Below are positions 3,333-55,226 of a stretch of DNA of 64,000 bases, piece after piece (positions within the stretch are counted from its first letter, which is position 1; each line of letters opens with the position of its first letter). Source of the stretch: Octopus sinensis (lineage: Eukaryota). The notes beneath the pieces are model-generated. The model had not been told where the DNA came from, did no database searches, and saw nothing but the letters and a program-made list of their open reading frames with translations. The stretch covers positions 38,812,001 to 38,876,000 of the forward strand of contig NC_043003.1 of NCBI RefSeq assembly GCF_006345805.1, written 5' to 3'. Made by a program: the position numbers and the translations under genes.

Positions 3333-3538
3333 CTTTTACTTGTTTCAGTCATTTGACTGTGGCCATGCTGCAGCACCGCCTTTAGTCGAGCAAATCGACC
3401 CCAGGACTTATTCTTTGAAAGACTAGTACTTATTCTATCAGTCTCTTTTGCTGAACTGCTAAGTTATGGGGGACGTATACACACCACCATCGGTTGTCAA
3501 GCAATGCTAGGGGGACAAACACAGACACACAAACATAT

Positions 3539-3589
<51 letters not shown>

Positions 3590-3750
3590 TATGACAGGCT
3601 TCTTTCAGTTTTCGTCTACCAAATCCACTCACAAGGCATTGGTCGGCCCGGGGCTATAGCAGAAGACACTTGCCCAAGATGCCACGCAGTGGGACTGAAC
3701 CCGGAACCATGTGGTTGGTAAGCAAGCTACTTACCACACAGCCACTCCTA
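3333..3750 (-). mobile_element. Full-length tRNA-derived SINE (family A) with internal (TA)n
   Basis: Minus-strand head GGAGTGGCTGTGTGGTAAG...GGTTCAGTCCC, central microsatellite, tail GGCGGTGCTGCAGCATGGCCACAGTCAAATGACTGAAACAAGTAAAAG; paralogues at 50995-51404 and 54646-55040. Confidence 0.8.
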
Positions 3751-18725: not shown

Positions 18726-19772
18726 ATTATATCGAGTCAAAAGTTTTACAGTGTTTTAGTAACTTATTTGCTTTATTCGGCACATTACAACAAAAATAGC
18801 TATTTCTTTACTACCCACAAGGGGCCAAACACAGAGAGGACAAACAAGGACAGACAAACGGATTAATTTGATTATATCGACCCCAGTGCGTAACTGGCAC
18901 TTATTTAATCGACCCCGAAAGAATGAAAGGTAAAGTCGACCTCGGCGGAATTTGAACTCAGAACGTAGTGGCAGACGAAATACTGCTAAGCATTTCGCCT
19001 GCCGTGCTAACGTTTCTGCCAGCTCGCCGCCTTCTACAACAAAAATAGCGTAGCATTCAAAGTAGAAGCCCTCGTATTCCACCGTCAGAAGCCACCTTTC
19101 CACCTGTTTTTTGATCCCATGCTGATATCCATTTTTGTCTTTCGAGGCGAAGAACTCCTTCACTGAATTTTCATCCTCATCTTGGTTAATGAAGTGTCGC
19201 GAGCACAAAAAATAAAAGATGGATTGGAACGAGTAATAATCCGAGGGAGATATTTTTCTGCAACCCTAACGTGCGTAAGCAGTGGTTAAAAAAAATGGGC
19301 TAGCTTCTGGAATTTGTCGCCAAACATGGGCGTTTTGAACACAAGATAATGCTCTGCGTCTGATGGAATTATGAGGGGATAATTCACTACAAATTCGTTC
19401 CGGATGGTCGAACCATCGATGTCAACATGTACTCCGAACAGCTGGAGCGGTTGTATGCCATTGTGCGGCAAAATACCCGACATTGGTTAACAGAAAGCGA
19501 GCTCTTCCGCAGCAGAATAACGTAAGACCTCTTACCGCTCGAACAACCCGGAACGAGCTCCGGGAATTTGAGGGAATCGAATTGTTAGCACATCCAGCGT
19601 AAAATCCGTACCTCGTTCCCTCGGATTATTACTTGTTCCGATCCATGGCTCACTTCTTGCGCTTGCGTTTCATCAACCAAGAGGCCTCAACTTTGAATGC
19701 CAGACTACTTTTGTTGTAAATTGATTATAAAACAAATAAGTTTCAAAAATATTGCAAAATTTTGGCAATATA
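18726..19772. mobile_element. Two mariner 3' halves fused in inverted orientation
   Basis: Minus strand 18726-19246 encodes PSDYY..F...KEFFASK...GI....RW...VEYEGFYFE; plus strand 19247-19690 encodes KIMLCV*WNYEGIIHY...PSDYYLF; both outer ends are related TIR-like sequences. Confidence 0.65.
18801..19034 (-). mobile_element. SINE family C (Nin/Deu-like core) with 15-bp TSD
   Basis: TSD TACAACAAAAATAGC at 18786-18800 and 19035-19049; tail ...GCCCCTTGTGGGTAGTAAAGAAAT. Confidence 0.88.
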
Positions 19773-19804: not shown

Positions 19805-20018
19805 GAGCTGGCAGAATCGTTAGCGCGCTGGGCGAAATGCTTAGCGGTATTTCATCTGCCGTTACGTTCTGAGTTCAAATTCCGCCGAAGTCGACTTTAC
19901 CTTTCATCCTTTCGGGGTCGATTAAATAAGTACCAGTTACAGACTGGTGTCAATGTAATCGACTTAATCCCTTTGTTTGTGCCCTCTATGTTTAGCTCCT
20001 TATGGGCAATAAAGAAAT
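19805..20018 (+). mobile_element. SINE family C
   Basis: GAGCTGGCAGAATCGTTAGC head; tail TGGGCAATAAAGAAAT. Confidence 0.8.
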
Positions 20019-20199
20019 AAATATTCTATACATTTGATATCTCATATTTACAATAATTTCATACATCTTAAATTTCCCCTACAATATTTTTCATATTTCA
20101 TTAGGATGTCAGATAAATTTGATCGTTTTTTTTTCTACTTTATTCCTTATTTTTCATCAACAGTTTTCACAAATCAGTCAATAATATATTTTCCATTGT

Positions 20200-30717: not shown

Positions 30718-32070
30718 ACAATTTGTCCTACACGATTAACCACAGTTCATATACCACGTGCGCAGATATACAATACGGAGAGTGATATAGTATATCACTG
30801 GAGAGCAGGCTGTATGGATCACACCCAAGGCTTTCTAGCAGCTAATTATATGGCAATGGGTCTGCTCGAGGGCTGCGCTAAACCACCACCACTACCACCA
30901 CCACCACCACCACCACCACCACCATCTCCAACAACAACATCATCAACAATAAAACCAAGGTTGTTGCCACCGATTTTACTGTCAAGAACCGTAATCAAGA
31001 AATGTCAAACGGCTTTACACAGTTCTTCACAAACCATTTTGAAAGCCTGGCATTTGATAGTCTCTTTTACAATATTACTATTGTTATTGGTATTGTTTTT
31101 GTTATCGTTCTTGTTATTGTTGAAGTTGCAGATATTGTTCGTGGTAGTGATGATTGGTGTCCCAGTGAAGATAGAAATAGGTGTGCTCATAGTGATGATG
31201 ATGATGATGATGATGGCAACAGTGGTGGCAACTGGTGACAGTGCTCGTGGTGGTGATGGTGGTGGTGGTGATGGTGGTGGTGGTGGTGGGGTGGGGGGTG
31301 GTGTTAGGAGACAACAAAAAAATTAGGGATAAAGAGGAGGCCTATTAAAACGAGATTAAAGACAATATCACAACAACGGAGAATCTCCATCACCGCAGCG
31401 CAGCCACCGACCATCACCACCACTACCACCACCACCACCACTACCACCACCATCATCATCACCATCATCATCATTACTACCCCCTTTGTCGTTATTATTT
31501 ACCATCAGCAAAATCGCTGTAATAGAACTGGGACGTCACCATCAATGCACCGTCGCCCTACGTCACATTATCCCCCATCCCCACTCCTCAGCACACCACC
31601 CCAGGCCGCATGACGATACCAAACACACTACACTATCATCACCACCACCACCACCACCATCTCCAAAACCATCACCATCACTATCACCATCGCCATCAGC
31701 ATCACTACCATATCAAGAAAACTACCACGATCACCATCACCATGTTACCATCATCATATATGACCACCATACTCCTCCTCCTCCTCCTCCTCCTCCTCCT
31801 ACTACTACTACTACTACTATTACTACTACTACTAGTTGTAATAGATATTGTTGCTACGTCTGTTAATTGTGTATTGAGTTAGTAGTATTAGTAGTAGTAG
31901 TGGCTATAGTAGTGGTGGTAGTGGTGGTAGTGGTGGTGGTGGTAGTAGTAGTGGTGATAGTTGTGGCAGGAGTAGTAGTAGTAATAGTAGTAGACGTGTT
32001 GTTGTTGTTGTTGTTGGTGGTGGTGGTAGAGGTAGTAGCAGTAGTAGTTGTGATGCTGAGTGACTAAAGA
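30620..32070. repeat. Compound microsatellite field: (GT)n, (CCA)n, (GAT)n, (CCT)n, (ACT)n, (GTA)n
   Basis: Direct reading; accounts for the poly-P/V/H ORFs. Confidence 0.95.
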
Positions 32071-32278
32071 GAGAGTGTCATTGTAAGTTTAAAAAAAAGA
32101 AAGGGGGAGGGTGGAGAGAGGGAAGGAGAGAAGGAAAGGATTGAACTGAAGGAAAGCAGACGAAATATGTGGGAAGTGGTGGCAATGATCCTTCCGTCTA
32201 TCAGAGAATGTTAAAATGCCTTGTTTATCGATTATACTTGTCATCCTAAATTGACTACGACATGACGGAGTGGTGGTG

Positions 32279-32329
<51 letters not shown>

Positions 32330-32333
<4 letters not shown>

Positions 32334-33213
32334 TGTGTGTGTGTGTGTGTGTGCGTGTGCGTGTGATGATGGTGTAGTTTGTAGTCGGGTATCGAGTTAC
32401 TTACTGGTCTGTGGTAGACGTAGGTGGTAGTGGCGGCGATAGTATTATGGAGTTGGTTAGTCGAAGGCACGTGGCTTAGTGGTTAGGGTATTCGGCTCTT
32501 GATCGTAAGGTCGTGAGTTCGATACCCGATGGCGCGTTGCGTCCTTGAGCAAAACACTTTATTTCACGTTGCTCCAGTCCATTCAGCTGGCAAAAGTGAA
32601 CAGTACCTGCATTTCAAAAGGCCAGCCTTGTCACGTTCTGTATCATGCTGGACATCCGGAGAGAACTACGTCAAGGAGTATTCAGCCACTTGCACGTTAA
32701 TTCATGACCGGATCGGATCAACAAACGGAGTACCAGTTATGAAGTTTCTTAGTGGATGTCATGTGTGTGTATGTGAGAGTGTGTGTGTGTGTGTGTGTGC
32801 GTGTGCGTGTGATGATGGTGTAGTTTGTAGTCGGGTATCGAGTTACTTACTGGTCTGTGGTAGACGTAGGTGGTAGTGGCGGCGATAGTATTATGGAGTT
32901 GGTTAGTCGAAGGCACGTGGCTTAGTGGTTAGGGTATTCGGCTCTTGATCGTAAGGTCGTGAGTTCGATACCCGATGGCGCGTTGCGTCCTTGAGCAAAA
33001 CACTTTATTTCACGTTGCTCCAGTCCATTCAGCTGGCAAAAGTGAACAGTACCTGCATTTCAAAAGGCCAGCCTTGTCACGTTCTGTATCATGCTGGACA
33101 TCCCGGAGAGAACTACGTCAAGGAGTATTCAGCCACTTGCACGTTAATTCATGACCGGATCGGATCAACAAACGGAGTACCAGTTATGAAGTTTCTTAGT
33201 GGATGTCATGTGT

Positions 33214-33251
<38 letters not shown>

Positions 33252-33690
33252 GCGTGTGATGATGGTGTAGTTTGTAGTCGGGTATCGAGTTACTTACTGG
33301 TCTGTGGTAGACGTAGGTGGTAGTGGCGGCGATAGTATTATGGAGTTGGTTAGTCGAAGGCACGTGGCTTAGTGGTTAGGGTATTCGGCTCTTGATCGTA
33401 AGGTCGTGAGTTCGATACCCGATGGCGCGTTGCGTCCTTGAGCAAAACACTTTATTTCACGTTGCTCCAGTCCATTCAGCTGGCAAAAGTGAACAGTACC
33501 TGCATTTCAAAAGGCCAGCCTTGTCACGTTCTGTATCATGCTGGACATCCCGGAGAGAACTACGTCAAGGAGTATTCAGCCACTTGCACGTTAATTTCAT
33601 GACCGGATCGGATCAACAAACGGAGTACCAGTTATGAAGTTTCTTAGTGGATGTCATGTGTGTGTATGTGTGTGTGGTGTGTGTGTGTGT
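32330..33690 (+). repeat. Tandem triplication (period 446-447 bp) of (GT)n + unique spacer + family B SINE
   Basis: SINE head AAGGCACGTGGC at 32464, 32910 and 33357; units almost identical. Confidence 0.92.
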
Positions 33691-43150: not shown

Positions 43151-43443
43151 GCTTACTTTGTTTAACGCTGAGTTAAGTAGATGGTCTAATGAAGCAGAGG
43201 TCAAAAAAGGGTGAGACAGAACTTTGGAACACAGAATTTCTGTCTCCGGCTTAGATGAAATGATGATAACGAGCTTGAGAGCAAGAACAACAAGAAAACG
43301 AGCTGTGATCCACTGTAAAGATTTCGAACGTTTAGCAGATCTGTTTTTGTCATGGCTTTCTATCACATGCACATTAAAATAAATGTACGTATACTATGTA
43401 TTTAGTTTTTCTGGACAAGATATTTTGTTTCTGTCAATCAGAC

Positions 43444-43529
43444 TGTTATGATGAGAGTTACGATGCCCCCTTGCGAGAGATAGACTAGTCCGAGTAAAGT
43501 ATAAATAGTAACGAGCCGAGTGAGTTCGA
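43444..43529 (+). promoter_or_regulatory. U3 part of the 5' LTR with TATA box
   Basis: Starts TGT right after the TSD; TATAAATA at 43500-43507, 30 nt upstream of AGTTCAG (43530). Confidence 0.75.
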
Positions 43530-45254
43530 AGTTCAGACTCGTTATTTTTATTTTTTTTATTTTTTATTTATTTTTTTTTTTTGAGTGAGTTATTTGGAGT
43601 TATTCTGATGTTTTGTTTCGAGTGAAGAGGTTGTGAGTTCGAGTTCGTTGGAGGACGTGGAATAATTTTTTTTCTTGAAAATGCAAGAGCAGACTTACGC
43701 GCGAGCGGCAGGCAGAGGCTTGGTTGACGGTGAGCTGGAGATGGAGGAGGTGGTGGTCGAACAAAAGACTTGCAAAGTATTTCGACAGTTTAAAGAGGGA
43801 GGGTGACTGTGTGATAGTCACACCGTCCGAGGAGGAGGAGCAGTGCAGAGAAGCGTACTATAACGTACAGGACGTGGTGTGTGGAGTCGAAAAAAATTGA
43901 AGTAGCGGAAATGGCAGAAGAAGTAGAAAGGTGTCTGAAGGAAATTGAGGGTGACCCACATTTTTCAAAAGAGGAAGGAAAGTATGCCACGGTGGTGGTA
44001 TATTTTGAAACAGAAAATGAGGCAAAAAAAACGCAACAAGACTTTTGAAATCGGATAAGTGGACTTTGCCACAGTGTCTGCGAAGGAGAGCAGTGAGGAT
44101 GAGAATCCATAGAATCTCACCCGAATTTAATATGGAAAGGTTGCTGCAGCAGTGCTGTTTAACTGCAAGGATGATGTGGAGGTACTGAAGGTGGAGAAGT
44201 CAGCGGAGGTGAAATGTGGTGGGGATATACGGTGCAGTTCTGGCACACATAACCGTGCGAGACCTGTACAACATCCCGGAGGAGCTGGTCTACCCTGACG
44301 AGACACGGCTCCGAGTTTGGGTAGAGGGAAGACCCCCAATTTGCTACAATTGTAAATCGAGGGGCCACATGAAAGATGTGTGCCCGCGGGAAAAAACAAA
44401 AGCACCAGAGGTTGTGATAGAGGATGTAAAGACCGTGTGTGGAGGAGCGAAAGCGGAGGAATACGAATGGAGGAGCAGTTAAGTGAGAAGAACGAGCGAG
44501 TGCAGAAGAGGAAAAAACAGAAGACGGAAGAGGTCAAGGGTGGAATCACCACCGAAAGATCAAAAAAAGAAAAAAATCAAAAGCAAGATAGCAGAAGAGA
44601 GAGAAGAGAAAACATACAAAGAAGGATAAAGAGAAGGCGAGAGAGCGGCCAAGGACAGAGTTTGAACAAGAATGGGAGACGAAGTGAACGAGCAATTGGA
44701 ATCGTGTAAATATGGAAGAAGGCCTACAGGAAAAACTTGAAGGCAGTTGTGATGTATATCAAGAATACAGAAGTGAGAAGAGACTTGTAGGTAAGAAAGG
44801 GTTGGTCAGGGTGAAGGTGAACCAAAACTGTATGGTGACGACGTGAAAGGCGTCATTATAGACAAAGAGACATATATAAAATTAAAAAAGATGTTTAATG
44901 CTATGCATATAACGCATTATGTGCGGTATGATAAATTGCCAGATGTTATAGACCAAACGGACCTATTGGATTATATGACGGACGAGCGTCTAATGTAGAA
45001 TTGTAATTGTAAAATTGTATAATGTTAACATGTAAATTTGTAAATTGAACTGAAATATATTAACTGTGAAATTGTATTGAATATATGAAATGTAAATTGT
45101 ATTTTAAACGGAACTGCGAGTTGGGGGTTCGTAAGCCGTTCCATCTCATTACATATAATTCATTTTACTTCATATTTTTTTTTACTTTATGTACCCCATG
45201 TCCCGTCTTGTAATGTCCCCTTCTTCGTGGCCCCTTTGTGGGTAATAAAGAAAT
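43530..45254 (+). mobile_element. Cassette A1: ORF1-only zinc-knuckle retroelement (1725 bp)
   Basis: Begins AGTTCAGACTCG, ends GTGGGTAATAAAGAAAT; roughly 95% identical to A2 by eye. Confidence 0.85.
43681..44998 (+). pseudogene. A1 ORF (ORF1p/Gag-like CCHC protein) with many 1-bp indels
   Basis: MQEQTYARAAGRG... to ...DYMTDERLM*; VEGRPPICYNCKSRGHMKDVCP retained. Confidence 0.85.
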
Positions 45255-47001
45255 AGTTCAGACTCGTTATTTTTTTTGAGTGAGTTATTTGGAGTTGTTC
45301 TGGTGTGTTTGTTTCGAGTGAAGAGGTTGTGAGTTCGAGTTCTTTGGAGGACGTGGAATAATTTTTTTCTTGAAAATGCAAGAGCAGACTTACGCGCGAG
45401 CGGCAGGCAGAGGCCTGGTTGACGGTGAGCTGGAGGTGGTGGTCGAACAGAAGACTTTACAAAAGTATTTCGACAGTTTAAAGAGGGAGGGTGACTGTGT
45501 GATAGTCACACCGTCCGAGGAGGAGGAAAGCAGTGCAGAGAAGCGTACTATAACGTACAGGACGTGGTGTGTGGAGTCGAAAAAAATTGAAGTAGCGGAA
45601 ATGGCAGAAGTAGAAAGGTGTCTGAAGGAAATTGAGGGTGAACCCACATTTTTCAAAGAGGGAAGGAAGTATGCCACGGTGGTGGTATATTTTGAAACAG
45701 AAAATGAGGCAAAAAGAACGCAACAAGACTTTTGAAATCGGATAAGTGGACTTTGCTACCAAGTTACTGCGGAAGGAGGGCAGTGAGGATGAGAATCAAT
45801 AGAATCTCACCCGAATTTAATATGGAAAGGTTGCTGGCAGCAGTGCTGTTTAACTGCAAGGATGATGTGGAGGTACTGAAGGTGGAGAAGTCAGCAGAGG
45901 TGAAGTGGTGGGGATATACGGTGCAGGTCCTGGCACACATAACCGTGCGAGACCTGTACAACATCCCGGAGGAGTTGGTCTACCCTGACGAGACTCGGCT
46001 CCGAGTTGTGGTAGAGGGAAGACCCCCAATTTGCTACAATTGTAAATCGAGGGGCCACATGAAGGATGTGTGCCCGCGAGAAAAAACAAAAGCACCAGAG
46101 GTTGTGATGGAGGAGTGTAGAGATGCGTGTGTGGAGGAAGCGAAAGCGGAGGAAGCACGAATGGAGGAGCAGTTAAATGAGGAAGAACGAGCAAGTGCAG
46201 AAGAGGAAAAAACAGAAGACAGGAAGAGATCAAGGGTGGAATCACCACCGAAAGATCAAAAAAAGAAAAAAATTAAAAGCAAGATAGCAGAAGAGAGAGA
46301 AGAGAAAACATACAAAGAACAGGAAGTAAAAGAGAAGGCGAGAGAGCGGCCAAGGACAGAGTTTGAACAAGAATGGGAGACAAGAGTGAACGAGCAATTG
46401 GAATCGTGTAAATATGGAAGAAGGCCTACAGGGAAAAACTTGAAGGCAGTTGTAATGTATATCAAGAATACAGAAGTGGAAAAGAGACTTGTAGGTAAGA
46501 AAGGGTTGGTCAGGGTGAAGGTGAACCCAAAACTGTATGGTGACGATGTAAAAGGCGTCATTATAGACAAAGAGACATATATAAAATTAAAAAAGAATTT
46601 TAGTGCTATGCATATAACGCACTATGTACGGTATGATAAATTACCAGATGTGATAGATCAAACGGACCTATTGGATTATATGACGGACGAGCGTCTAATG
46701 TAAAAGAATTAGAATTGTTAATTGTAAAATTATTTGATGTAAAGTTGTGTTTTGAACAGGAATATATGTAATGTTAACACGTAAAATTGTAAAATTATTG
46801 TAACTGTAAAATTGTATTGGAATATATGAAATGTACAATTGTATTTTAAACGGAACTGCGAGTTGGGGGTTCGTAAGCCGTTCCATCTCATTATATATAA
46901 TTCATTTTTTACTTCATATTTTATTTTTTTATTTTATGTACCCCATGTCCCGTCTTGTAATGTCCCCCTCTTCGTGGCCCCTTTGTGGGTAATAAAGAAA
47001 C
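45255..47001 (+). mobile_element. Cassette A2: ORF1-only zinc-knuckle retroelement (1747 bp)
   Basis: Begins AGTTCAGACTCG, ends GTGGGTAATAAAGAAAC. Confidence 0.88.
45376..46703 (+). CDS. A2 protein (~442 aa if one frameshift near 45720 is restored): RRM-like region, CX2CX4HX4C knuckle, charged linker, unassigned C-terminal domain
   Basis: ORFs 45370-45735 and 45732-46703 overlap; knuckle CYNCKSRGHMKDVC at 46032-46073; the VEGRPP.C context resembles Tx1/L1-clade ORF1p (ZCCHC3-like); no RT or endonuclease. Confidence 0.8.
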
Positions 47002-48660
47002 AGTTCAGACTTCGGAGTCGTTGTTATTGAACGCGCGTGAAATTGTAAGTAGGAAAAATTGTTGTACGTTTGTTGATACGGTTTCGTGTTATACTGTTTC
47101 TGTTCTGGCGGCCGTTGTCTGTCTGTGTGAGACAGACAAGAGGATATGGACGACCCCTCCCTGATGGAAGAGTCGGAGGAGGAATAGTTGTTCGAGACCT
47201 TGTCAGAAGCATCGACTTCTGAGGACGAGCTGATCGGCGCTGTGAATAATATGGATATTAAAACCGGGAAGACGTCCGCTGGAGCTGCAAAAAAGAAGAC
47301 GACAGAGGAAAAGGAGATTAACCTAGAAAAATTGCCAGGTTTTCAAGCTTACATAACTAAAGTAGGTGGTGAGGTAAAACTACTTCCACCAGAGAAACGA
47401 GAAGAATGGTTTATGAAAAGGATTATAAAATACCGGACATATGGAAAAGATAACAGGAAAGTAGAAATAATGAAAATGGAAGATATTGAGGAGGCGCTGA
47501 GAAGAGAGAAGGAAGAAATCACATTCATGACAAGAGGAAACGAGTTCGGAACCATAATAGTGCAGTTCGAAAGCAAAAATATAGCAAGGAAAATGGCAAC
47601 GAAGACAATAAAAACTGAAAAAGTAATATTATTACCCTCCTACATGAACCAAAGAATAAATAGAATAAGAGTTGAAGGGATACCCCACCCCACATTGAGG
47701 GTGAATGGGTCGTCGCGGCGATCATAAAAGATGTGGAAGAAGAGACAAACATTTTACAAGCGACCGTAAAAAATGAAGGTTTACGTGGCAAAACGCTAGA
47801 GATGAGCGTTCAAGCAGAGGAGGGTGCACTGGAGAAGATGGCGGACAGCATAATTTTGGGGAATATAGTAATGAGAGTGTGGGTGGAGGGCAGAGCACCA
47901 AGGTGCTATAAGTGTGGCCTGAGGGGGCCACATAAGAGCCTACTGCCCTCCCCCACAAAAAGAAACAGTGATCCAGGAAGAGGAGGAGACGGAGCCGGAA
48001 AAAGTTGAGGAGGAAGAATCTGAGGAGGAGAAGGAGGCCCAAACTGAGTGGGAAGACGTAAGGAAAAAAAGAAAAAGGAAAGTGAACTTTATCGAACCCC
48101 AATCCACCCCAACACCACCCGCACCCTCTGAGCCCCATCCTTCCCCTGCAAACAAAGATCCCACCCACTCCCCGCCTACATGAAAACCTAAAAACGCAGA
48201 CATACAGAGTAAACAAGAGCCCAAGTCCCATTTTTTATGTTTTGTAAAAAAAAAAGGAAGACAATGAGAACTCAACAAGATTCTTTGGTAAAGAAGCATG
48301 GTATGAGGGAGAAGATGGGAGTTACTTGGTGGTGGAAGGTGAAGTAATGGACATAAGGAAGATGTGTGTAAATGAAGGTGTAAAAGCGATTGAGGTGGAA
48401 TTTTCGAATGAGAAGATAAGAGTATGAAAGGATATTTGAGAAAGTGATAAGAAAAGAGGGACTTTTGATTGGAGATGATAGGTGACGAAGGGTTGACAAG
48501 GACAGGTAAGTGGTGTTGGCGGATGGGGCCGTCAGCATCGCTTTCATATTATCATTATCATTCTAAAAATTCATTCTCCATACTATTAATTATAATGTTC
48601 TATGTCCCCAATGTCTTGTGGTGTCCCCTCTGTGTCGCCCCTAGTGGGTAATAAAGAATT
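47002..48660 (+). mobile_element. Cassette B: diverged ORF1-only zinc-knuckle retroelement (1659 bp)
   Basis: Begins AGTTCAGAC, ends AGTGGGTAATAAAGAATT; protein homologous to A, DNA not obviously alignable outside the ends. Confidence 0.85.
47146..48183 (+). pseudogene. B ORF (~345 aa reconstructed), CCHC zinc-knuckle protein with one stop and two homopolymer frameshifts
   Basis: ATG 47146, TAG 47185; ...GTIIVQFES...LLPSYMNQR..IRVEGIP / WVVAAII...RVWVEGRAPRCYKCGLRG / HIRAYCP..., acidic and Pro-rich tail. Confidence 0.8.
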
Positions 48661-48835
48661 AGTTCAGAGTCGAGTGAAGTACGTGTTATTTCGCAGTGAA
48701 GTCGGAAGGTGTCGGTTGGTTAGTTAACAAAGAATATTGATTGTTAGTTCGTAAAGAGATTTGTTAGTTTGTTAAATTGTTTTTATTATTGTCTGGTTAT
48801 CTTATTTATTGTACATAACAAATTACGTTACAACA
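48661..48835 (+). repeat. R-U5 part of the 5' LTR
   Basis: Starts AGTTCAGAGTCG, ends TTACAACA; 48684-48835 aligns with 50394-50530. Confidence 0.85.
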
Positions 48836-48837
48836 TC

Positions 48838-48856
48838 TGGCGACAAGGGTTTCGAA
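48838..48856 (+). promoter_or_regulatory. Primer-binding site (tRNA-Arg-like, tentative)
   Basis: TGGCGACAAGGG.TTCGAA 2 nt after the LTR end; resembles the complement of a tRNA-Arg(TCG) 3' end with a short gap. Confidence 0.6.
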
Positions 48857-48905
48857 TCTCACGTAGATTATTTAACAATTTTTTCATGATACAACTTGTT
48901 AAATA

Positions 48906-50393
48906 ATGGAAGACCTATCAGCTTCCATAGTACAGTTGCAAAAGCAACAACAAGAGCAGCAACAAGAATTGCGGAAGAAACTATAACAGCAACAACAATT
49001 ATTGAAGCTATATTAAAAAAAGTCCAAAAATGAGTTAAGTTCGTTTTCGCCAGACGGTGTTTCGAACTTGATTAATGAATTCAGTTATAACCCAGAGGTG
49101 GGTATAACTTTTATATCGTACTACAGAAGGTACGATGAGGTTTTTAAATAAGATTGCAAATCATGGTCGGACGAACAAAAAGTGAGATTGTTATTCCGAA
49201 AATTTGCTCCGTTAGAGCATGAACGTTACTATAATTTCATATTGCCCAAAAAAACCTAATGAAATTTGTTTTAAAGAAACAATAGAATTACTGTGCAACA
49301 TATTCAGCGATAAAACTTCTCGTTAACACTGAAGTGTTGAAATATACCGAAAAAAAAGAGAATGATGATTTTATCACATACACAAGAACTGTCAACAGGA
49401 TGTGTGAAAGTTTTAAGTTCAAAGAACTTACACCCGAGATGTTCAAGTGTTTTATTTTCGTACAAGGCCTTACAGCAAGCGAAGATACAGAAATTTGGGC
49501 AAGAATTCTTTCTAAATTGAAACAAGCGAACTAAGATCTAACCTTACAGTCCCTAGCTGAAGAATGCCAAACGATGGTAAACCTGAAACACGATGTAGAA
49601 AAAATTCAAGTAAAGGATTCTTCAAAAATACAGATATGCTGACCGGAAAAGTACAAACCCCACCCCCAAAAAAGCGCCACGTCCTAATCCATGTTATGGA
49701 TGTGGGGGTGTACATTTCAGAAAAGACTGTTCATTTAAAAATAATAAAAAAACGTTACAGTTGCAAAAGAACTGGTCACCAGAGTTCACACTGCAGAACA
49801 AAATTACGAAGGTCAAACGTTAAAAATCTTAGAGAGCTCTCAGCAGAAACAAAAATCAACTCCCACATAAGAAAATTCGTACACGTAAAAATAAATGGAA
49901 ATTCATATTAAACTTCAACATGATATTGGAAATGAGATTTCAATAATAAATATAGACACATGGAAGAAAATAGGGAAACCTATGTTGAGAAAAACAGCGA
50001 AATCTGCTCCTAACGTGACGGACGACAAATTACATTTCTTAGACGAAATGTGGACTGATGTCACATTTCGGAGGAAAACATTCAAGGCGAAAGTCTTCAT
50101 CGTTAAAAATGCAACCGATCTGTTGGGTACCGATGGTTAGAATTTTTTGATTTATAGGATCTTCCCATAAATCTCTCTTGTAAAAACGTAGATGGTTGTT
50201 CCTCTAAAAATAATTCGTCTGAAGAGTTAAAGAGAAAATTTAAAAAAATATTTTCGCAACTACTCTTGGACAAACTAGGTCTATGCACAAAGGCTGAAGC
50301 ATGTTTTGAATTAGATGATAACAGTCACCGTTGTTCAAGCCTAATAGGAAAGTGCCTTCTGCGGCAATAAAGCAAGTGGACGTTGAGTTGGAC
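48906..50393 (+). pseudogene. Gypsy gag-protease remnant, truncated at the start of RT
   Basis: Poly-Q N-terminus, FSYNPEVG.TF..YYRRY..VF, KFKELTPEMFKCFIFVQGL, knuckle CYGCGGVHFRKDC, degenerate protease LQHDIGNEISIIN...W.KIGKP, then PLFKPNRKVP; multiple stops and frameshifts. Confidence 0.85.
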
Positions 50394-50530
50394 TGTTAGT
50401 TCGCAGTGAAGTCGGAAGGTGTCGGTTGGTTAGTTAACAAGGAATATTGATTGTTGGTTCGTTAAGAGATTTGTTAGTTCGTTACATTGTTTTTATCTCA
50501 TTTATTGTACGTAACAATTACGTTACAACA
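50394..50530 (+). repeat. 3' LTR remnant (distal R/U5 only)
   Basis: Aligns to 48684-48835 with about 8 substitutions and one indel; followed by the TSD. Confidence 0.85.
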
Positions 50531-50730
50531 CAGACGATGCACCATAGTCTTGCCATTAACCTTCAGTAAAATGGAACTAATTTTCGAGTGTTAATTGGTA
50601 AATATGCACATCGCCATTGGTGGGAGTATTATTTATTTAATTGTAGCTTGGCCAAGCTTCACGAACATTAACATACGAAGTGGTACCAAAAAGTTCCCAG
50701 ACTAGTTTTGTAGCACGCCAACAGATGGCA

Positions 50731-50935
50731 GCACACCGGGCGAAATGCTTAGCGGTATTTCGTCTGCATTACGTTGTGAGTTCAAATTCCGCCGAGGTCG
50801 ACTTTGCCTTTCATCCTTTCGGGGTCGATAAATTAAGTACCAGTTACGCATTGGGGTCGATGTAATCGACTTAATACCTATGTCTGTCCTTGTTTGTCCA
50901 TTCTGTGTTTAGCCCCCTGTGGGTAATAAAGAAAT
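50731..50935 (+). mobile_element. SINE family C (5'-truncated)
   Basis: Core GGTCGACTTTGCCTTTCATCCTTTCGGGGTCGATAAATTAAGTACCAG; tail GCCCCCTGTGGGTAATAAAGAAAT. Confidence 0.85.
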
Positions 50936-50994
50936 AGGTTGCATGCACAGTTAGAGCTAGCGGTGATCTTCATGAGGCTGTGTGCCGAGTGACA

Positions 50995-51404
50995 TTCTTT
51001 TTCTTTTTCTTTTTTTTACTTGTTTCAGTCATTTTGACTGCGGCCATGCTGGAGCACCGCCTTTAATCGAGCAACTCGACCCCGGGACTTATTCTTTGTA
51101 TGCCCAGTACTTATTCTATCGGTCTCTTTTGCCGAACCGCTAAGTGACAGGGACATAAACACACCAGTATCGGTTGTCAAGCAATGCTAGGGGGACAAAC
51201 ACAGACACACAAACACACACATACATATATATATACACACATATATACGACAGGCTTCTTTCAGTTTCCGTCTACCAAATCCACTCACAAGTCATTGGTT
51301 GGCCCGGGGCTATAGCAGAAGACACTTGCCCAAGATGCCACGCAGTGGGACTGAACCCAGAACCATGTGGTTGGTTAGCAAGCTACTTACCACACGGCCA
51401 CTCC
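50995..51404 (-). mobile_element. SINE family A
   Basis: Close paralogue of 3333-3750. Confidence 0.85.
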
Positions 51405-53874
51405 AACGGTGTGTTTACTTCGCAAGTTGTGAAATTTGCGTTTTTGTGATCAGGTGTATGCTATAGTCTGTGATTTTTGTCATGGACAGGAAGTTGGAAC
51501 AAAGAGCAAACGTGAAATTTTGCGTTAAACTTTGGAAATCTGCTACAGAGACATTGAGCATGCTTCGGCAAGCTTATGGCAATGAGGCAATGGGTCGTAA
51601 GCAATGTTTCGAGTGGCACACGCGCTTCAAAAGCGGAAGAACGTCTTTGGAAGACGATGAGCGATCTGGAAGGCCTGCCACGAGCGCCACCCCTTGAAAT
51701 GTGGAGAAAATTCATCAGTTAGTATATGAGGATCGTCAGAGGACAATCAACGACGTTTTGAAGTGTTTGAGGGAGGACATTATGCGAAAATGACCGGATC
51801 TGTGGAGCACGAAAACCCTGTCACCGAGCTCTTCTCACTTGTGGGTTTCTCGCCAAAAACAATACGGTATCTCTTCCGCCCCCGATCTATTCGCCAGATT
51901 TAGCACCTGCAGACTCCCATCTCTTCCCCAAGAGAAAAAGGCAGCTCAAAGGTCGCTGCTTAAACACCGTTGTCGAGATCCAGAGCAAATCGCAGAAGGT
52001 CCTCGACTCGCTTACGGAAAACGACTTCCCGGCCGGATTCCAAAAGTGACAGGAACGTTGGTACCGGAGTATTGATACGCAAAGTGATGATTTCGAAAGA
52101 GGTGATATTAAAACTTAGGCAAATAAGTTATTTTTTATTAAACATAACTAGTCCGGAAACTTTCTGATACCATCTCGTACAAACCATATGCTGTTTCAAT
52201 AAGAATAATTTCGTTCTTATCGGGCTGCGGGCGAGAGATTTGATGTTCCTACCTGACAAAGTCAAATTCCACAGAAACGCATGCGTTTATGAACAAATGA
52301 TCTTATTCACAGCCGATCTTGTGTCTTCACTCATGACTAAGAGAAGCACTTTCTCCCGGGACTATCTCGACAGCGGAAGGTCTTCTCATGTCTGAAGGCA
52401 GCCGAATGTGTTGAATATGACTTCATATGAATAAATTTCATTTAACGATCCTTTGTACGACATTATTATTTATCTAGACCTTCCAATATTTATTGAAATC
52501 ACCCAAAACTGCAAATCACTCAAAGTCTACTGCATTATGTATAAAATCTGACATAAATAGCACAAACTTCAGAATTAATAACTAAATATGGAAAGCTATA
52601 GCAAACATCGGTGATATTGACGAATATTTCGTAAATGCAAGACAATATTACTTTAGTTTATTAACTTTGGCAAATAACCTCAAGAAATAAGATAGATTCG
52701 CTATATCGATGTAATATACAGAAACGTAAAAATAGCGTGAAGTGGTTAACATGATGGAAAATAAACTATACTATATAAACATTGAAATAAGGCTACATAT
52801 TCTATATATCTAGGTATCATTTTTAAATGGTTGTTTGTCTGTATTACTTACAACCAATCTCGTTGTCTCTCCCTGTCTCTTCCTCAATCCCTATTTGCTT
52901 GCTTGTATAGGTGTGTATCTGTCTATTCTGTCTATCTGCCTGTATGGTATACATAGCTATCCAGTTGCCCGACTCTCTCAATGTATGTCTATCTATTTCA
53001 ATAAATTATGAACACGTGTTCTACGCGTGTATCCAAACACATGGATATTTAAAACACGTATCAACCACTTATACTGACGCGCACAAACTCAGAAACGAGA
53101 ACTGTCGCTTCCCAACCCACAGACACACACACACGTTTACATATACATACGCACACATATGTTCCTATATATATATATATACACACACACACGCGCGCGC
53201 ACAAACACTCGCACACAACAACAACAACAAATCACAAAACTAGGGGTAACTACATACAGATCCATCATACGGACAGCTATTAGGAAAGGTCACAGATGTA
53301 AGAGCTGATCACGTAGCTGCTGTTGGGTACTGGTTATTAAGTGGTGGCGGTGGGAGGTGACAGATAAACTGAGAAGGTGACAGTGTTTGAGTATGTGTGT
53401 CCGAGAGAGAGAGAGAGAGCTAGAGAGAGAGAAGAGAGAAGGGGGAGTGGTAGAGAGTCCTGGCGGTTTGGGGTAGAGAGAGAGATGGGGAAGGATAGAG
53501 ATGGAGAGGTGAGGGGGAAATTTGATATGTGACAATGATATATATATATATAATATATATACATATATATACATATATATACATATATATATACATATTA
53601 TATATATATACACACATATATATATATACATATATGTATATGTATATATATATATACATGCGCATATTTATATATATATATATACATATATATACACACA
53701 TATATACACATACATGCACACACTCTCACATGTATAATAGGTATATATACATACCTATTTATATATATATGTGTGTGTGTATTGTTTATATGTGTACACG
53801 TACGTACGCATACCTACGAATATATATATATGCATATACATATACATACATCACTCACACATACAGTCACCCCT

Positions 53875-54645: not shown

Positions 54646-55226
54646 TTTACTCTTTTACTTGTTTCAGTCATTTGACTGTGGCCATGCTGGAGCACCGCCT
54701 TTAGTCGAGCAAATCGACCCCACAACTTATTCTTTGTAAGCCTTGTACTTTATTCTATCGGTTTTTTTGCCGAACTGCTAAATTACGGGGACGTAAACAC
54801 ACCAGAATCGGTTGGCAAGCGATGTTGGGGGACAAATATAGACACACAAACATACAAACACACACACACACATATATATACATATATACACATATATACG
54901 ACAGGCTTCTTTCAGTTTCCGTCTACCTACTCCACTCAGAAGGCTTTGGTTGGCCCGAGGCTATAGTAGAAGACACTTGCTCAAGGTGCCCGGAACCATG
55001 TGGTTCGTAACCAAGCTACGTACCACACATCCACTCCTACGCCTATATTCTGAAAGTTGTTCTATTTACGTGTCAGGTTTTCTGAGTTCAAATTCTGCTG
55101 AGGTCGACTTTGCCTTTCATCCAATCGGGGTCAATAAATTAAGTATCAGTTGCGTACTGGAGTCGATCTAATCGACTGAGCCCCTCCCCCAAAATTTCGG
55201 GCCTTGTGCCTAGAGCGGAAAAGAAT
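54646..55226. mobile_element. SINE family A (minus, 54646-55040) followed by a family C fragment (plus, 55070-55226)
   Basis: Match to the copies above. Confidence 0.75.

What the first reader, a model, noticed from the sequence alone, without database searches (positions are those of the whole stretch)
45241..45275. Junction geometry implies terminally redundant cassette RNA (two rival mechanisms)
At all three junctions AATAAA lies exactly 5 nt before AGTTCAG (45244-45249, 46991-46996, 48650-48655). Normal cleavage 10-30 nt after AATAAA would fall inside the next AGTTCAGA.. motif, so an RNA started at 43530 would carry the short R sequence at both ends. Model 1: the host's minus-strand strong-stop DNA jumps onto this RNA, copies it, and jumps back, giving U3-(R-cassette)n-R-U5 with no endonuclease needed. 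Model 2: sequence-specific target-primed reverse transcription by a partner LINE, with the 9-12-nt motif as TSD.
Basis: inference. Interest (0 to 1): 0.75.

Follow-up and report, generated by a model that had tools for sequence, protein, structure and literature searches.

The report
ORF1-only LINE-type array in octopus LTR

Summary
AATAAA-N5-AGTTCAG occurs exactly three times (45244, 46991, 48650); with one mismatch allowed there are 4 matches and no shuffle reaches that number.

The AATAAA is not a free-standing poly(A) signal. It lies in a conserved ~55-nt 3' tail (…GCCCCTTGTGGGTAATAAAGAAAT). The three cassettes share this tail with a tRNA-type SINE in the same window and with an endonuclease+RT LINE in Octopus sinensis, whose ORF1 belongs to the cassette protein family.

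Each cassette (1.66-1.75 kb) carries only that ORF1: a CCHC knuckle, and upstream of it a conserved domain I could not assign to an RRM fold. In other octopus loci such units occur in three forms:
- solitary, with unrelated 10-19-bp target duplications;
- 5'-truncated;
- in a second mixed head-to-tail array with no LTR features in its assembled flanks.

Target-primed reverse transcription by a partner LINE (Model 2) is therefore largely supported. Strict site specificity is not.

Model 1 (LTR strong-stop jumping) is unnecessary but not excluded, because the host's 3' LTR lacks the informative part.

Two things remain unexplained. The array starts at the TATA-predicted start site, and the LTR's R begins with the cassettes' first 8-12 nt.

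This is a new variant of a known kind, of moderate interest.

The parts
43439..43443 (+). Left copy of the 5-bp target-site duplication (CAGAC) of the host LTR element
   Evidence: The same pentamer follows the 3' LTR end at 50531-50535. It directly precedes TGTTAT, the LTR's first bases.
43444..43529 (+). U3 of the 5' LTR (86 bp), with TATAAATA at 43500-43507 about 30 nt before 43530
   Evidence: It starts TGTTAT, and the LTR ends ...ACAACA (TG...CA termini). Its last 40 nt share five 8-mers with the cassette 1/2 5'UTR (0 of 2000 shuffles).
43530..45254 (+). Cassette 1: an ORF1-only LINE-type unit made of 5'UTR, ORF1 remnant (43683-44998) and 3'UTR with conserved tail
   Evidence: 4.8% substitution divergence from cassette 2 (91.5% identity with gaps). 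tblastn matches to the ORF1 family. ORF1 is broken at least 8 times, counting stops and frame changes.
45255..47001 (+). Cassette 2: the same family as cassette 1 and the best-preserved unit; ORF1 at 45376-46703
   Evidence: Its 323-residue piece finds 180 relatives. The best are from Octopus bimaculoides, O. sinensis and O. vulgaris, with a more distant one from Argonauta hians. CCHC knuckle. At least 1 break, which cassette 1 shares.
47002..48660 (+). Cassette 3: a different subfamily of the same kind of unit; ORF1 remnant from 47147 to about 48470
   Evidence: At DNA level only the last ~70 nt match cassettes 1/2. It is colinear at 66-73% identity with the solitary element in L005. At least 4 breaks in the first ~1 kb of coding sequence.
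45198..45254 (+). Conserved 3' tail of cassette 1 (the same block lies at 46945-47001 and 48602-48660). A 4-bp hairpin is followed by (G)TAATAAAGAAAT.
   Evidence: Alignment A3. Local-alignment z-scores are 10.2-12.6 against the SINE tail and 7.3 for cassette 3 against the L002 LINE tail. Hairpin arms differ between subfamilies but stay paired.
48661..48835 (+). R/U5 part of the 5' LTR. It begins AGTTCAGAGTCG, the cassettes' first 12 nt with one difference.
   Evidence: 48684-48835 matches 50394-50530 (9 mismatches in 137 aligned bases).
48838..48858 (+). Primer-binding-site-like sequence (TGGCGACAAGGG...) 2 nt after the LTR end
   Evidence: Read. It starts with TGG as PBSs do. No matching tRNA gene was found, so the tRNA is unidentified.
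48908..50392 (+). Host internal region: a broken gag-protease remnant with no RT or integrase
   Evidence: Two successive pieces match successive parts of Pfam DUF7083 (E 4.5e-4 and 4.8e-3). CCHC-like and protease-like stretches were read by eye. No stop-free stretch exceeds 116 codons.
50394..50530 (+). 3' LTR fragment (U5 part only). It starts TGTTAG, the hexamer that begins both the LTR (43444) and the retained part (48684).
   Evidence: The pattern fits a deletion between two TGTTAT direct repeats that removed U3, the start of R and anything inserted there (inference).
50531..50535 (+). Right copy of the CAGAC target-site duplication
50712..50937 (+). Neighbouring tRNA-type SINE copy that ends in the same tail (…CCCCCTGTGGGTAATAAAGAAATAG)
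   Evidence: Further copies lie at about 18802-19036 (-), with a 15-bp TSD and no poly(A), and at about 19806-20019 (+).

Best explanation
The cassettes are non-autonomous LINE-type retrotransposons that have kept only ORF1. ORF1 here has a conserved N-terminal domain, one CCHC knuckle, a Lys/Glu-rich stretch and a C-terminal domain. The cassettes also carry the 3' tail that the reverse transcriptase of a partner LINE family presumably recognises.

The AATAAA sits inside that tail, right after a small conserved hairpin. Copying starts 5-8 nt after it. This is why every unit, and the SINE that borrows the same tail, ends at the same distance from AATAAA without a poly(A) run.

[quoted passage not shown] Head-to-tail arrays are a by-product of that machinery. 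They could arise in one event, if the RT runs from the 5' end of one RNA onto the tail of the next or copies a read-through array transcript. They could also grow when a new copy is primed and resolved on the homologous tail/5'-end junction of a resident unit, with DNA-level duplication possibly adding units.

In this window such an array entered a genomic 5' LTR at its transcription start. The 8 nt AGTTCAGA shared by the LTR's R and the cassette 5' ends acted as target duplication and/or as microhomology for joining the 5' end.

Shown: cassette identity, tail sharing, the partner-type LINE, solitary, truncated and arrayed copies, and the host anatomy. Inferred: the RT's use of the tail, how arrays form, and the role of the 8-mer.
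For: - Tail: the cassettes, five SINE copies, the L002 LINE and four cassettes from other loci align over ~55 nt that end in AATAAAG(A/T)3-5. Shuffle tests give z 10-13 for cassette vs SINE, and z 7.3 for cassette 3 vs the L002 LINE, with 0 of 200 shuffles reaching the score.
- Hairpin: the 4-bp hairpin before AATAAAG keeps pairing with different arms (GCCC/GGGT, AGGC/GCCT, GGGC/GCTC).
- Partner LINE: L002 carries an ORF1 of the same family (P0012, E 2.9e-18), followed by Exo_endo_phos (2.4e-12), RVT_1 (3.8e-16) and zf-RVT.
- TPRT hallmarks: solitary units have TSDs of 19 bp (L005, inserted in a SINE), 11 bp (L006) and ~10 bp (L010), all different and with no poly(A). SINE TSDs are 14-15 bp. 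5'-truncated units occur in L001 unit A and L003.
- Arrays without an evident LTR: L001 holds at least 3 units of 2 subfamilies, with a sequenced tail-to-5'UTR junction and a truncated 5'-most unit next to unrelated DNA.
- Not plain tandem duplication: both arrays mix subfamilies.
- No RT or EN ORF lies in any cassette.
Against: - Non-specific TPRT does not predict that the array begins at the TATA-predicted start (about 43530), nor that R starts with the cassettes' own first 8-12 nt.
- The TSS-proximal LTR sequence also shares significant words with the cassette 1/2 5'UTR. This hints at a closer LTR-cassette relationship than a chance hit.
- No TSD flanks the array other than the motif itself.
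- The only autonomous LINE found is a distant, decayed relative in another species (37% identity in ORF1). No RT of the window's own subfamilies was seen.
- The L001 junction lacks AGTTCAGA and its 3' end lies in an assembly gap, so the two arrays may not share one mechanism and an LTR context for L001 is not fully ruled out.
- Cassettes 1 and 2 share a frame break. That fits local DNA duplication as well as copying of a defective source.
- Divergence cannot order the events: cassette 1-2 is 4.8±1.0% and LTR-LTR is 6.6±4.1%.
Confidence: 0.6

Rival explanations
1. Reader's Model 1. During reverse transcription of the LTR element, minus-strand strong-stop DNA (complementary to R-U5) paired with AGTTCAGA at the 3' end of an array-derived cassette RNA. 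It copied that RNA, jumped again through the same 8-10 nt onto further cassette RNAs, and finally jumped onto the 3' R of the genomic RNA. The array would then have been built between U3 and R before integration and copied into both LTRs.
For: - It alone makes the position a necessity: the array lies exactly between U3 and R, at the TATA-predicted start.
- Every junction carries the R-like 8-mer.
- The left junction keeps the cassette variant (…GAC) and the right junction the host variant (…GAG), as jumping would leave them.
- TSS-proximal LTR words recur in the cassette 1/2 5'UTR, suggesting past exchange between the two kinds of element.
Against: - It needs cassette RNAs that already end in the motif, so arrays must exist first. 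A mixed array exists with no LTR features in its assembled flanks (L001).
- It needs a LINE-type RNA to be packaged in the LTR element's particle.
- TPRT hallmarks are seen throughout the family.
- The two-LTR prediction cannot be checked here.
- No second copy of this LTR was found in 176 kb of related loci.
Confidence: 0.15
2. Reader's Model 2 in its strict form. The cassettes and their partner LINE are sequence-specific for AGTTCAGA(S)TCG. Each unit is an independent insertion into that site, and the 9-12-nt motif is the regenerated target-site duplication.
For: A perfect 8-mer (11 of 12 nt) flanks each unit. If a TSD regenerated the site, repeated hits would be possible. The 8-bp length is not far from the 10-19 bp seen elsewhere.
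Against: - Three solitary units and two SINE copies have unrelated TSDs and no common target sequence.
- The L001 junction has no such motif.
- The cassette-3-like solitary unit in L005 starts TGTTTGACACTTCG. This resembles AGTTCAGACTTCG although its TSD is different, and L004 has GGTTTCAGAC about 160 nt before its ATG. Both suggest the motif belongs to the element; the evidence is modest.
Confidence: 0.07
3. DNA-level processes built most of the array. One or two units were inserted by TPRT. Unequal exchange, replication slippage or gene conversion between the ~70-nt tail-plus-motif repeats then duplicated units, giving cassettes 1 and 2 here and units A and B in L001.
For: - In both arrays two adjacent units are ~91% identical and the third belongs to another subfamily.
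- Cassettes 1 and 2 share the frame break of cassette 2, with no indel between them in that neighbourhood.
- The junction repeats are 80% alike over ~70 nt.
Against: - It cannot place units of different subfamilies side by side, so at least two retro-insertions at the same point are still needed.
- It does not explain the position at the start site or the shared 8-mer.
- A shared break could also come from a defective source copy.
Confidence: 0.15

Closest known systems
HAL1 ('half-L1') of mammals
   Same: A non-autonomous LINE derivative that keeps 5'UTR, ORF1 and the LINE 3' end, lacks ORF2 and depends on the autonomous LINE (PMC5753468: HAL1 'encodes only ORF1p' and arose several times).
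   Different: HAL1 derives from L1, with a coiled-coil/RRM/CTD ORF1 and a poly(A) tail. The ORF1 here has a CCHC knuckle, the end is a specific tail without poly(A), the partner has APE+RT+zf-RVT and its clade is unassigned. Arrays are not a described HAL1 feature (my knowledge).
HeT-A (with TART/TAHRE) of Drosophila telomeres
   Same: A gag/ORF1-only non-LTR element that depends on a relative's RT and forms head-to-tail arrays of mixed families (PMC5537684; 10.1101/782904). From my own knowledge, HeT-A's 3'-end promoter drives the downstream neighbour and has been likened to a proto-LTR.
   Different: HeT-A arrays arise by addition to chromosome ends. The arrays here are interstitial, lying inside an LTR and in ordinary repeat-rich DNA, and solitary copies have TSDs. 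No promoter in the 3' end has been shown.
SINE-LINE pairs with a shared 3' tail (stringent recognition, e.g. eel UnaSINE1/UnaL2)
   Same: The SINE, the ORF1-only units and a LINE share a ~55-nt tail with a small hairpin. PMC4824008 states the principle: the partner LINE's RT recognises the tail.
   Different: The borrower here is a 1.7-kb protein-coding unit as well as a SINE. Recognition by the RT is inferred, not tested.
End-to-end template jumping by non-LTR RTs (R2; Bibillo & Eickbush 2004, cited in PMC2881922)
   Same: It would give precise tail-to-5'-end joins of separate RNAs, full-length internal units and a truncated 5'-most unit, as in L001.
   Different: It is known mainly in vitro for R2. 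Nothing here shows that the octopus RT does it.
Microhomology-mediated 5'-end attachment of L1/Alu (Zingler et al. 2005, cited in PMC2881922)
   Same: It could explain why the cassette's first 8 nt equal the target sequence at the LTR.
   Different: The usual microhomologies are 1-5 nt. Eight would be exceptional unless the two sequences are related by descent.
LTR elements that carry foreign modules in their LTRs (Cassandra, Helenus/Ajax; PMC10886601), and retroviral transduction
   Same: Foreign sequence sits inside an LTR. If acquired before integration, it would be copied into both LTRs.
   Different: Those modules are small-RNA genes propagated with the LTR family. Here there is no evidence that the array is a family feature, and the insert is itself a retrotransposon array.

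Membership tests
LINE-dependent non-autonomous retrotransposon (tail-sharing; HAL1- or SINE-like dependence) | 3' end homologous to that of an autonomous LINE | tested here: met
   Cassette 3 vs the L002 LINE tail gives z 7.3, with 0 of 200 shuffles reaching the score (alignment). L002 has Exo_endo_phos, RVT_1 and zf-RVT.
LINE-dependent non-autonomous retrotransposon (tail-sharing; HAL1- or SINE-like dependence) | Solitary copies flanked by target-site duplications of variable sequence | tested here: met
   L005 has 19 bp, L006 11 bp and L010 ~10 bp, all unrelated.
LINE-dependent non-autonomous retrotransposon (tail-sharing; HAL1- or SINE-like dependence) | 5'-truncated copies | tested here: met
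   L001 unit A and the L003 unit start inside ORF1.
LINE-dependent non-autonomous retrotransposon (tail-sharing; HAL1- or SINE-like dependence) | No endonuclease or RT of its own | tested here: met
   Units are 1.66-1.75 kb. Their ORF pieces match only zf-CCHC.
LINE-dependent non-autonomous retrotransposon (tail-sharing; HAL1- or SINE-like dependence) | Mobilised in trans by the partner's RT | not testable with these tools
   Inference from tail sharing only.
LINE ORF1 'type I' (RRM directly upstream of a CCHC knuckle; PMC4120745) | CCHC zinc knuckle | tested here: met
   zf-CCHC scores 21.3 bits (cassette 1 piece) and 19.4 bits (cassette 2 piece) against a 20.8 cut-off. The cysteine is nearly invariant in 39 relatives. 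A PDB profile search finds only knuckle proteins.
LINE ORF1 'type I' (RRM directly upstream of a CCHC knuckle; PMC4120745) | RRM fold upstream of the knuckle | tested here: inconclusive
   No Pfam RRM hit passes; there is only a 14-bit RRM_PARP14_1 hint. The single-sequence model has pLDDT 42.6, so no fold search was made.
LINE ORF1 'type I' (RRM directly upstream of a CCHC knuckle; PMC4120745) | Lies upstream of an APE-RT ORF2 in autonomous relatives | tested here: met
   L002.
HAL1 | Derived from an L1-clade element | not tested
   The clade of the L002 LINE was not assigned because no reference LINE library was at hand. This is an analogue, not a member.
HeT-A-type telomeric array element | ORF1/gag-only units in head-to-tail arrays | tested here: met
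   The window array and the L001 array.
HeT-A-type telomeric array element | Insertion restricted to chromosome ends | tested here: not met
   Solitary copies with TSDs lie inside ordinary DNA and inside a SINE. The window array lies inside an LTR element with unique flanks.
Site-specific LINE (R1, R2, Tx1 type) | All copies in one target sequence | tested here: not met
   TSDs and flanks are unrelated in L005, L006, L010 and the SINE copies.
LTR retrotransposon (the host) | Two LTRs with TG...CA ends and a short TSD | tested here: met
   TGTTAT...ACAACA termini and CAGAC on both sides. The 3' LTR is present only as its U5 part.
LTR retrotransposon (the host) | PBS next to the 5' LTR, and gag-pol between the LTRs | tested here: inconclusive
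   A TGG... sequence lies 2 nt after the LTR, but no tRNA was identified. There are weak colinear DUF7083 matches, and knuckle- and protease-like stretches read by eye. RT and integrase are absent.
Pre-integration capture into the LTR (strong-stop switching or transduction) | The same insert in both LTRs of one element | not testable with these tools
   The 3' LTR lacks U3 and the start of R. No other copy of the LTR lies in the DNA held.

The most novel reading that the evidence does not exclude
The LTR family and the ORF1-only cassette family may be coupled, not merely neighbours. The cassettes' 5' end (AGTTCAGA… plus further promoter-proximal words) would derive from the R/start region of this LTR family. 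Cassettes would re-enter such LTRs through that homology, either during the LTR element's own reverse transcription or through homology-guided TPRT. The result would be a composite in which a LINE-type passenger is transcribed from, and possibly propagated by, an LTR element. That would be a natural bridge between the two retrotransposition pathways.
Probability: 0.12. Interest if true: 0.8.

Novelty: new variant of a known kind. Interest (0 to 1): 0.45.

Why it matters
ORF1-only LINE derivatives are known from mammals (HAL1) and from fly telomeres (HeT-A). This is a cephalopod lineage of the same design with several subfamilies in at least three Octopus species. It uses a specific tail shared with one of the octopus SINEs, and it forms interstitial head-to-tail arrays.

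If the arrays come from RT template jumping or homology-guided reinsertion, they would be a natural record of a step known so far mostly from test-tube work.

The exact placement at an LTR's start site, together with the shared 8-12 nt, also offers a concrete case for asking whether LINE-type and LTR-type elements exchange sequence during reverse transcription.

For annotation, the practical point is that AATAAA here marks a LINE/SINE tail, not evidence of a retrovirus-like R region.

Tried and rejected
- Word-indexed protein search with the 323-residue piece found nothing, and with a 39-sequence profile only one protein. The exhaustive HMMER search was what found the family.
- Several UniRef-only relatives have no contig on record.
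- The PDB profile search returned only zinc-knuckle proteins.
- The single-sequence structure model was too poor to use (pLDDT 42.6), so no fold search was run.
- Rfam gave only chance-level hits in 42-52 kb.
- Smith-Waterman found no extended homology between host R/U5 or U3 and the cassette 5'UTRs. Only a word-count test was significant. I therefore rejected the idea that 48661-48700 is a stub of a fourth cassette: 48684 onward is present in both LTR copies.
- I considered that the true LTRs are only 48684-48835 and 50394-50530. I rejected this because the flanks then give no TSD, whereas 43444 gives CAGAC|TGTTAT.
- Dating by divergence cannot order LTR integration and cassette duplication.
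- A search for the host LTR or gag in 176 kb of related loci found nothing.
- The Logan contigs L008 and L009 turned out to be a GC-rich LINE fragment of another organism and say nothing about transcript ends.
Full report
**Observation.** The sequence and a pattern search confirm AATAAA at 45244, 46991 and 48650, each followed after exactly 5 nt by AGTTCAG. With one mismatch allowed there are 4 matches against 0.24 expected, and no shuffle reaches 4. The same AGTTCAGA(S)TCG also lies at 43530. TATAAATA is at 43500-43507, about 30 nt upstream.

**Anatomy of the locus.** The region is a decayed LTR retrotransposon, 43444-50530, flanked by CAGAC on both sides (43439-43443 and 50531-50535).
- The 5' LTR starts TGTTAT and ends ACAACA at 48835.
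- A TGG… primer-binding-like sequence follows 2 nt later.
- The internal 1.55 kb holds a broken gag-protease remnant. Two colinear pieces match Pfam DUF7083, no stop-free stretch exceeds 116 codons, and there is no RT or integrase.
- The 3' LTR is represented only by 50394-50530, which matches 48684-48835 (9 mismatches in 137 aligned bases). It begins TGTTAG, the hexamer that also begins the whole LTR and the retained part. A deletion between two TGTTAT repeats probably removed U3 and the start of R (inference).
- The 5' LTR is therefore U3 (86 bp), three cassettes (43530-45254, 45255-47001, 47002-48660), then R/U5 (175 bp).

**What the cassettes are.**
- Cassettes 1 and 2 differ by 4.8% in substitutions. 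Cassette 3 belongs to another subfamily: only its last ~70 nt match at DNA level, but its protein pieces are related.
- Each unit has a 120-150-nt 5'UTR, one gene and a ~300-nt 3'UTR.
- The gene is broken at least 8 times in cassette 1, at least once in cassette 2, and at least 4 times in cassette 3 (stops plus frame changes, lower bounds).
- The 323-residue piece of cassette 2 finds 180 relatives in an exhaustive HMMER search. The best ones, and those looked up, are uncharacterised 'CCHC-type domain-containing' proteins of Octopus bimaculoides, O. sinensis and O. vulgaris, plus a more distant one from Argonauta hians. The window is therefore almost certainly octopod DNA (inference).
- Uninterrupted relatives such as P0007 (453 aa) carry both parts of the gene in one frame.
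- Pfam sees only the CCHC knuckle.

**The tail.** The last ~55 nt of every cassette are homologous to the 3' end of a tRNA-type SINE present three times in the window (z 10-13).
- The SINE copy at about 18802-19036 has a 15-bp TSD and no poly(A); it ends …AAAGAAATA.
- In O. sinensis locus L002, a more distant member of the ORF1 family (P0012, E 2.9e-18) is followed by an ORF2 remnant with Exo_endo_phos, RVT_1 and zf-RVT.
- That LINE ends in …CAGCCCTTGTGGCCAATAAAAAGAATTA, a tail significantly similar to that of cassette 3 (z 7.3) and of the SINE (z 4.3).
- Just before (G)TAATAAAG all these tails can form a 4-bp hairpin whose arms differ between subfamilies yet stay complementary. The best of 16 registers was taken for each sequence, so this is supportive only.
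- AATAAA plus 5 nt is thus the fixed end of a LINE/SINE tail. That alone explains the constant spacing.

**Behaviour of the family elsewhere.**
- L005 (O. sinensis) holds a solitary cassette-3-like unit (66-73% identity) inserted in a SINE, with a 19-bp TSD.
- L006 (O. vulgaris) and L010 (O. sinensis) hold solitary units with 11-bp and ~10-bp TSDs.
- L003 and unit A of L001 are 5'-truncated.
- None of these has poly(A), RT or EN, and no two targets resemble each other.
- L001 (O. bimaculoides) holds a second head-to-tail array of at least three units from two subfamilies. It has a sequenced junction (…CCTGTAATAAAGATTTAC|CTGTTATTATATTG…), a truncated 5'-most unit abutting unrelated DNA, and no LTR features in its assembled flanks; its 3' end lies in an assembly gap.
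- These are hallmarks of target-primed reverse transcription, and they show that arrays belong to the family rather than to this LTR.

- An RNA read inside an array may run into the next unit before cleavage. What is copied, however, ends 5-8 nt after AATAAA, so the terminal redundancy is not transmitted.
- Model 2's predictions of a partner LINE with the same tail, 5'-truncated cassettes and a co-mobilised SINE are met. Sequence specificity is not.
- Model 1 is unnecessary for arrays but is not refuted for this locus.

**Mechanism.** I take TPRT by a partner LINE as the mover (confidence about 0.6 for the whole statement, higher for cassette identity).
- Three independent hits on one nucleotide by a non-specific endonuclease are implausible.
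- The array was therefore made either in one event (RT template jumping, or copying of a read-through array RNA) or by homology-assisted reinsertion at an existing tail/5'-end junction.
- DNA duplication is a possible contributor. Cassettes 1 and 2 share cassette 2's frame break, and both arrays contain a ~91% identical adjacent pair.

**What stays unexplained (note 3).**
- The array starts at the TATA-predicted start site.
- R begins with the cassettes' first 8-12 nt.
- AGTTCGA directly precedes AGTTCAGA at the left border.
- The 40 nt on either side of the motif in the LTR share 10-mers with the cassette 1/2 5'UTR: five shared 8-mers for U3 (0 of 2000 shuffles reach this) and three for R (about 0.5-1% of shuffles).
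- The solitary L005 unit starts TGTTTGACACTTCG, and L004 has GGTTTCAGAC about 160 nt before its ATG. Both are modest hints that the motif is the cassettes' own 5' end and not a TSD.
- A past acquisition of LTR start-region sequence by the cassettes, or homology-driven entry into the LTR, would fit. This is the novel case (probability 0.12).

**Comparison with known systems.**
- In design these are HAL1-like units (PMC5753468). In array habit they resemble HeT-A (PMC5537684). In tail logic they resemble stringent SINE/LINE pairs (PMC4824008).
- They are not members of HAL1 (clade untested), not telomere-specific and not site-specific.
- The ORF1 has the knuckle expected of 'type I' ORF1 (RRM plus CCHC; PMC4120745), but the RRM is unconfirmed.
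- I could not consult Repbase or Dfam, so the family may already be catalogued there.

- All related DNA came from 12 contig look-ups, and no genome-wide census was possible.
- My scripts printed the bounds of stop-free stretches, which I needed as query bounds. In my reasoning I also located one frame break of cassette 2 from the ends of ORF pieces.
- I repeat none of these places here. The consensus lines printed by the alignment tools were not used.

Noticed in passing
window 32210-33520: Three tandem copies of a ~446-bp unit (two of them 99% alike). Part of the unit is 85% similar to 2638-2728 (families D6 and D13). The region also has a strong GC skew.
   Followed up: no
window 51470-52170: Remnant of a Mos1-type mariner transposase (HTH_48, E 1.2e-9), just downstream of the LTR element. 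Similar-looking broken ORFs lie near 19000-19700.
   Followed up: partly
window 3352-3748, 51033-51404, 54671-55055: A second interspersed repeat family (83-96% alike, D8, D10, D14, D16) with an internal CA/TA microsatellite. The same element occurs in L001 and L003.
   Followed up: no
L005 9440-11080 and L003 10440-10677: A cassette is inserted into a SINE (L005), and a SINE is inserted into a cassette (L003). The two tail-sharing families were therefore active over overlapping periods.
   Followed up: partly
L007 9718-11790: An ORF1-only unit in O. vulgaris lacks the AATAAAG tail and is flanked by a ~70-bp direct repeat instead of a short TSD. This may be a 3'-truncated copy or a segmental event.
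   Followed up: no
protein P0016 (O. bimaculoides gene model): A predicted protein interrupts an RGS domain with a cassette-type knuckle and C-terminal segment. This is either a cassette inserted in a gene and annotated as exon, or a real exonisation.
   Followed up: no
window 31219-32060: A long GGT/AGT trinucleotide-rich stretch (D5) in the most GC-rich part of the window.
   Followed up: no
L002 9700-9790 and 15353-15380: The APE+RT LINE copy sits inside an (ATT)n microsatellite, and its tail ends …GAATTA. The tail may have been primed on a similar simple repeat.
   Followed up: no
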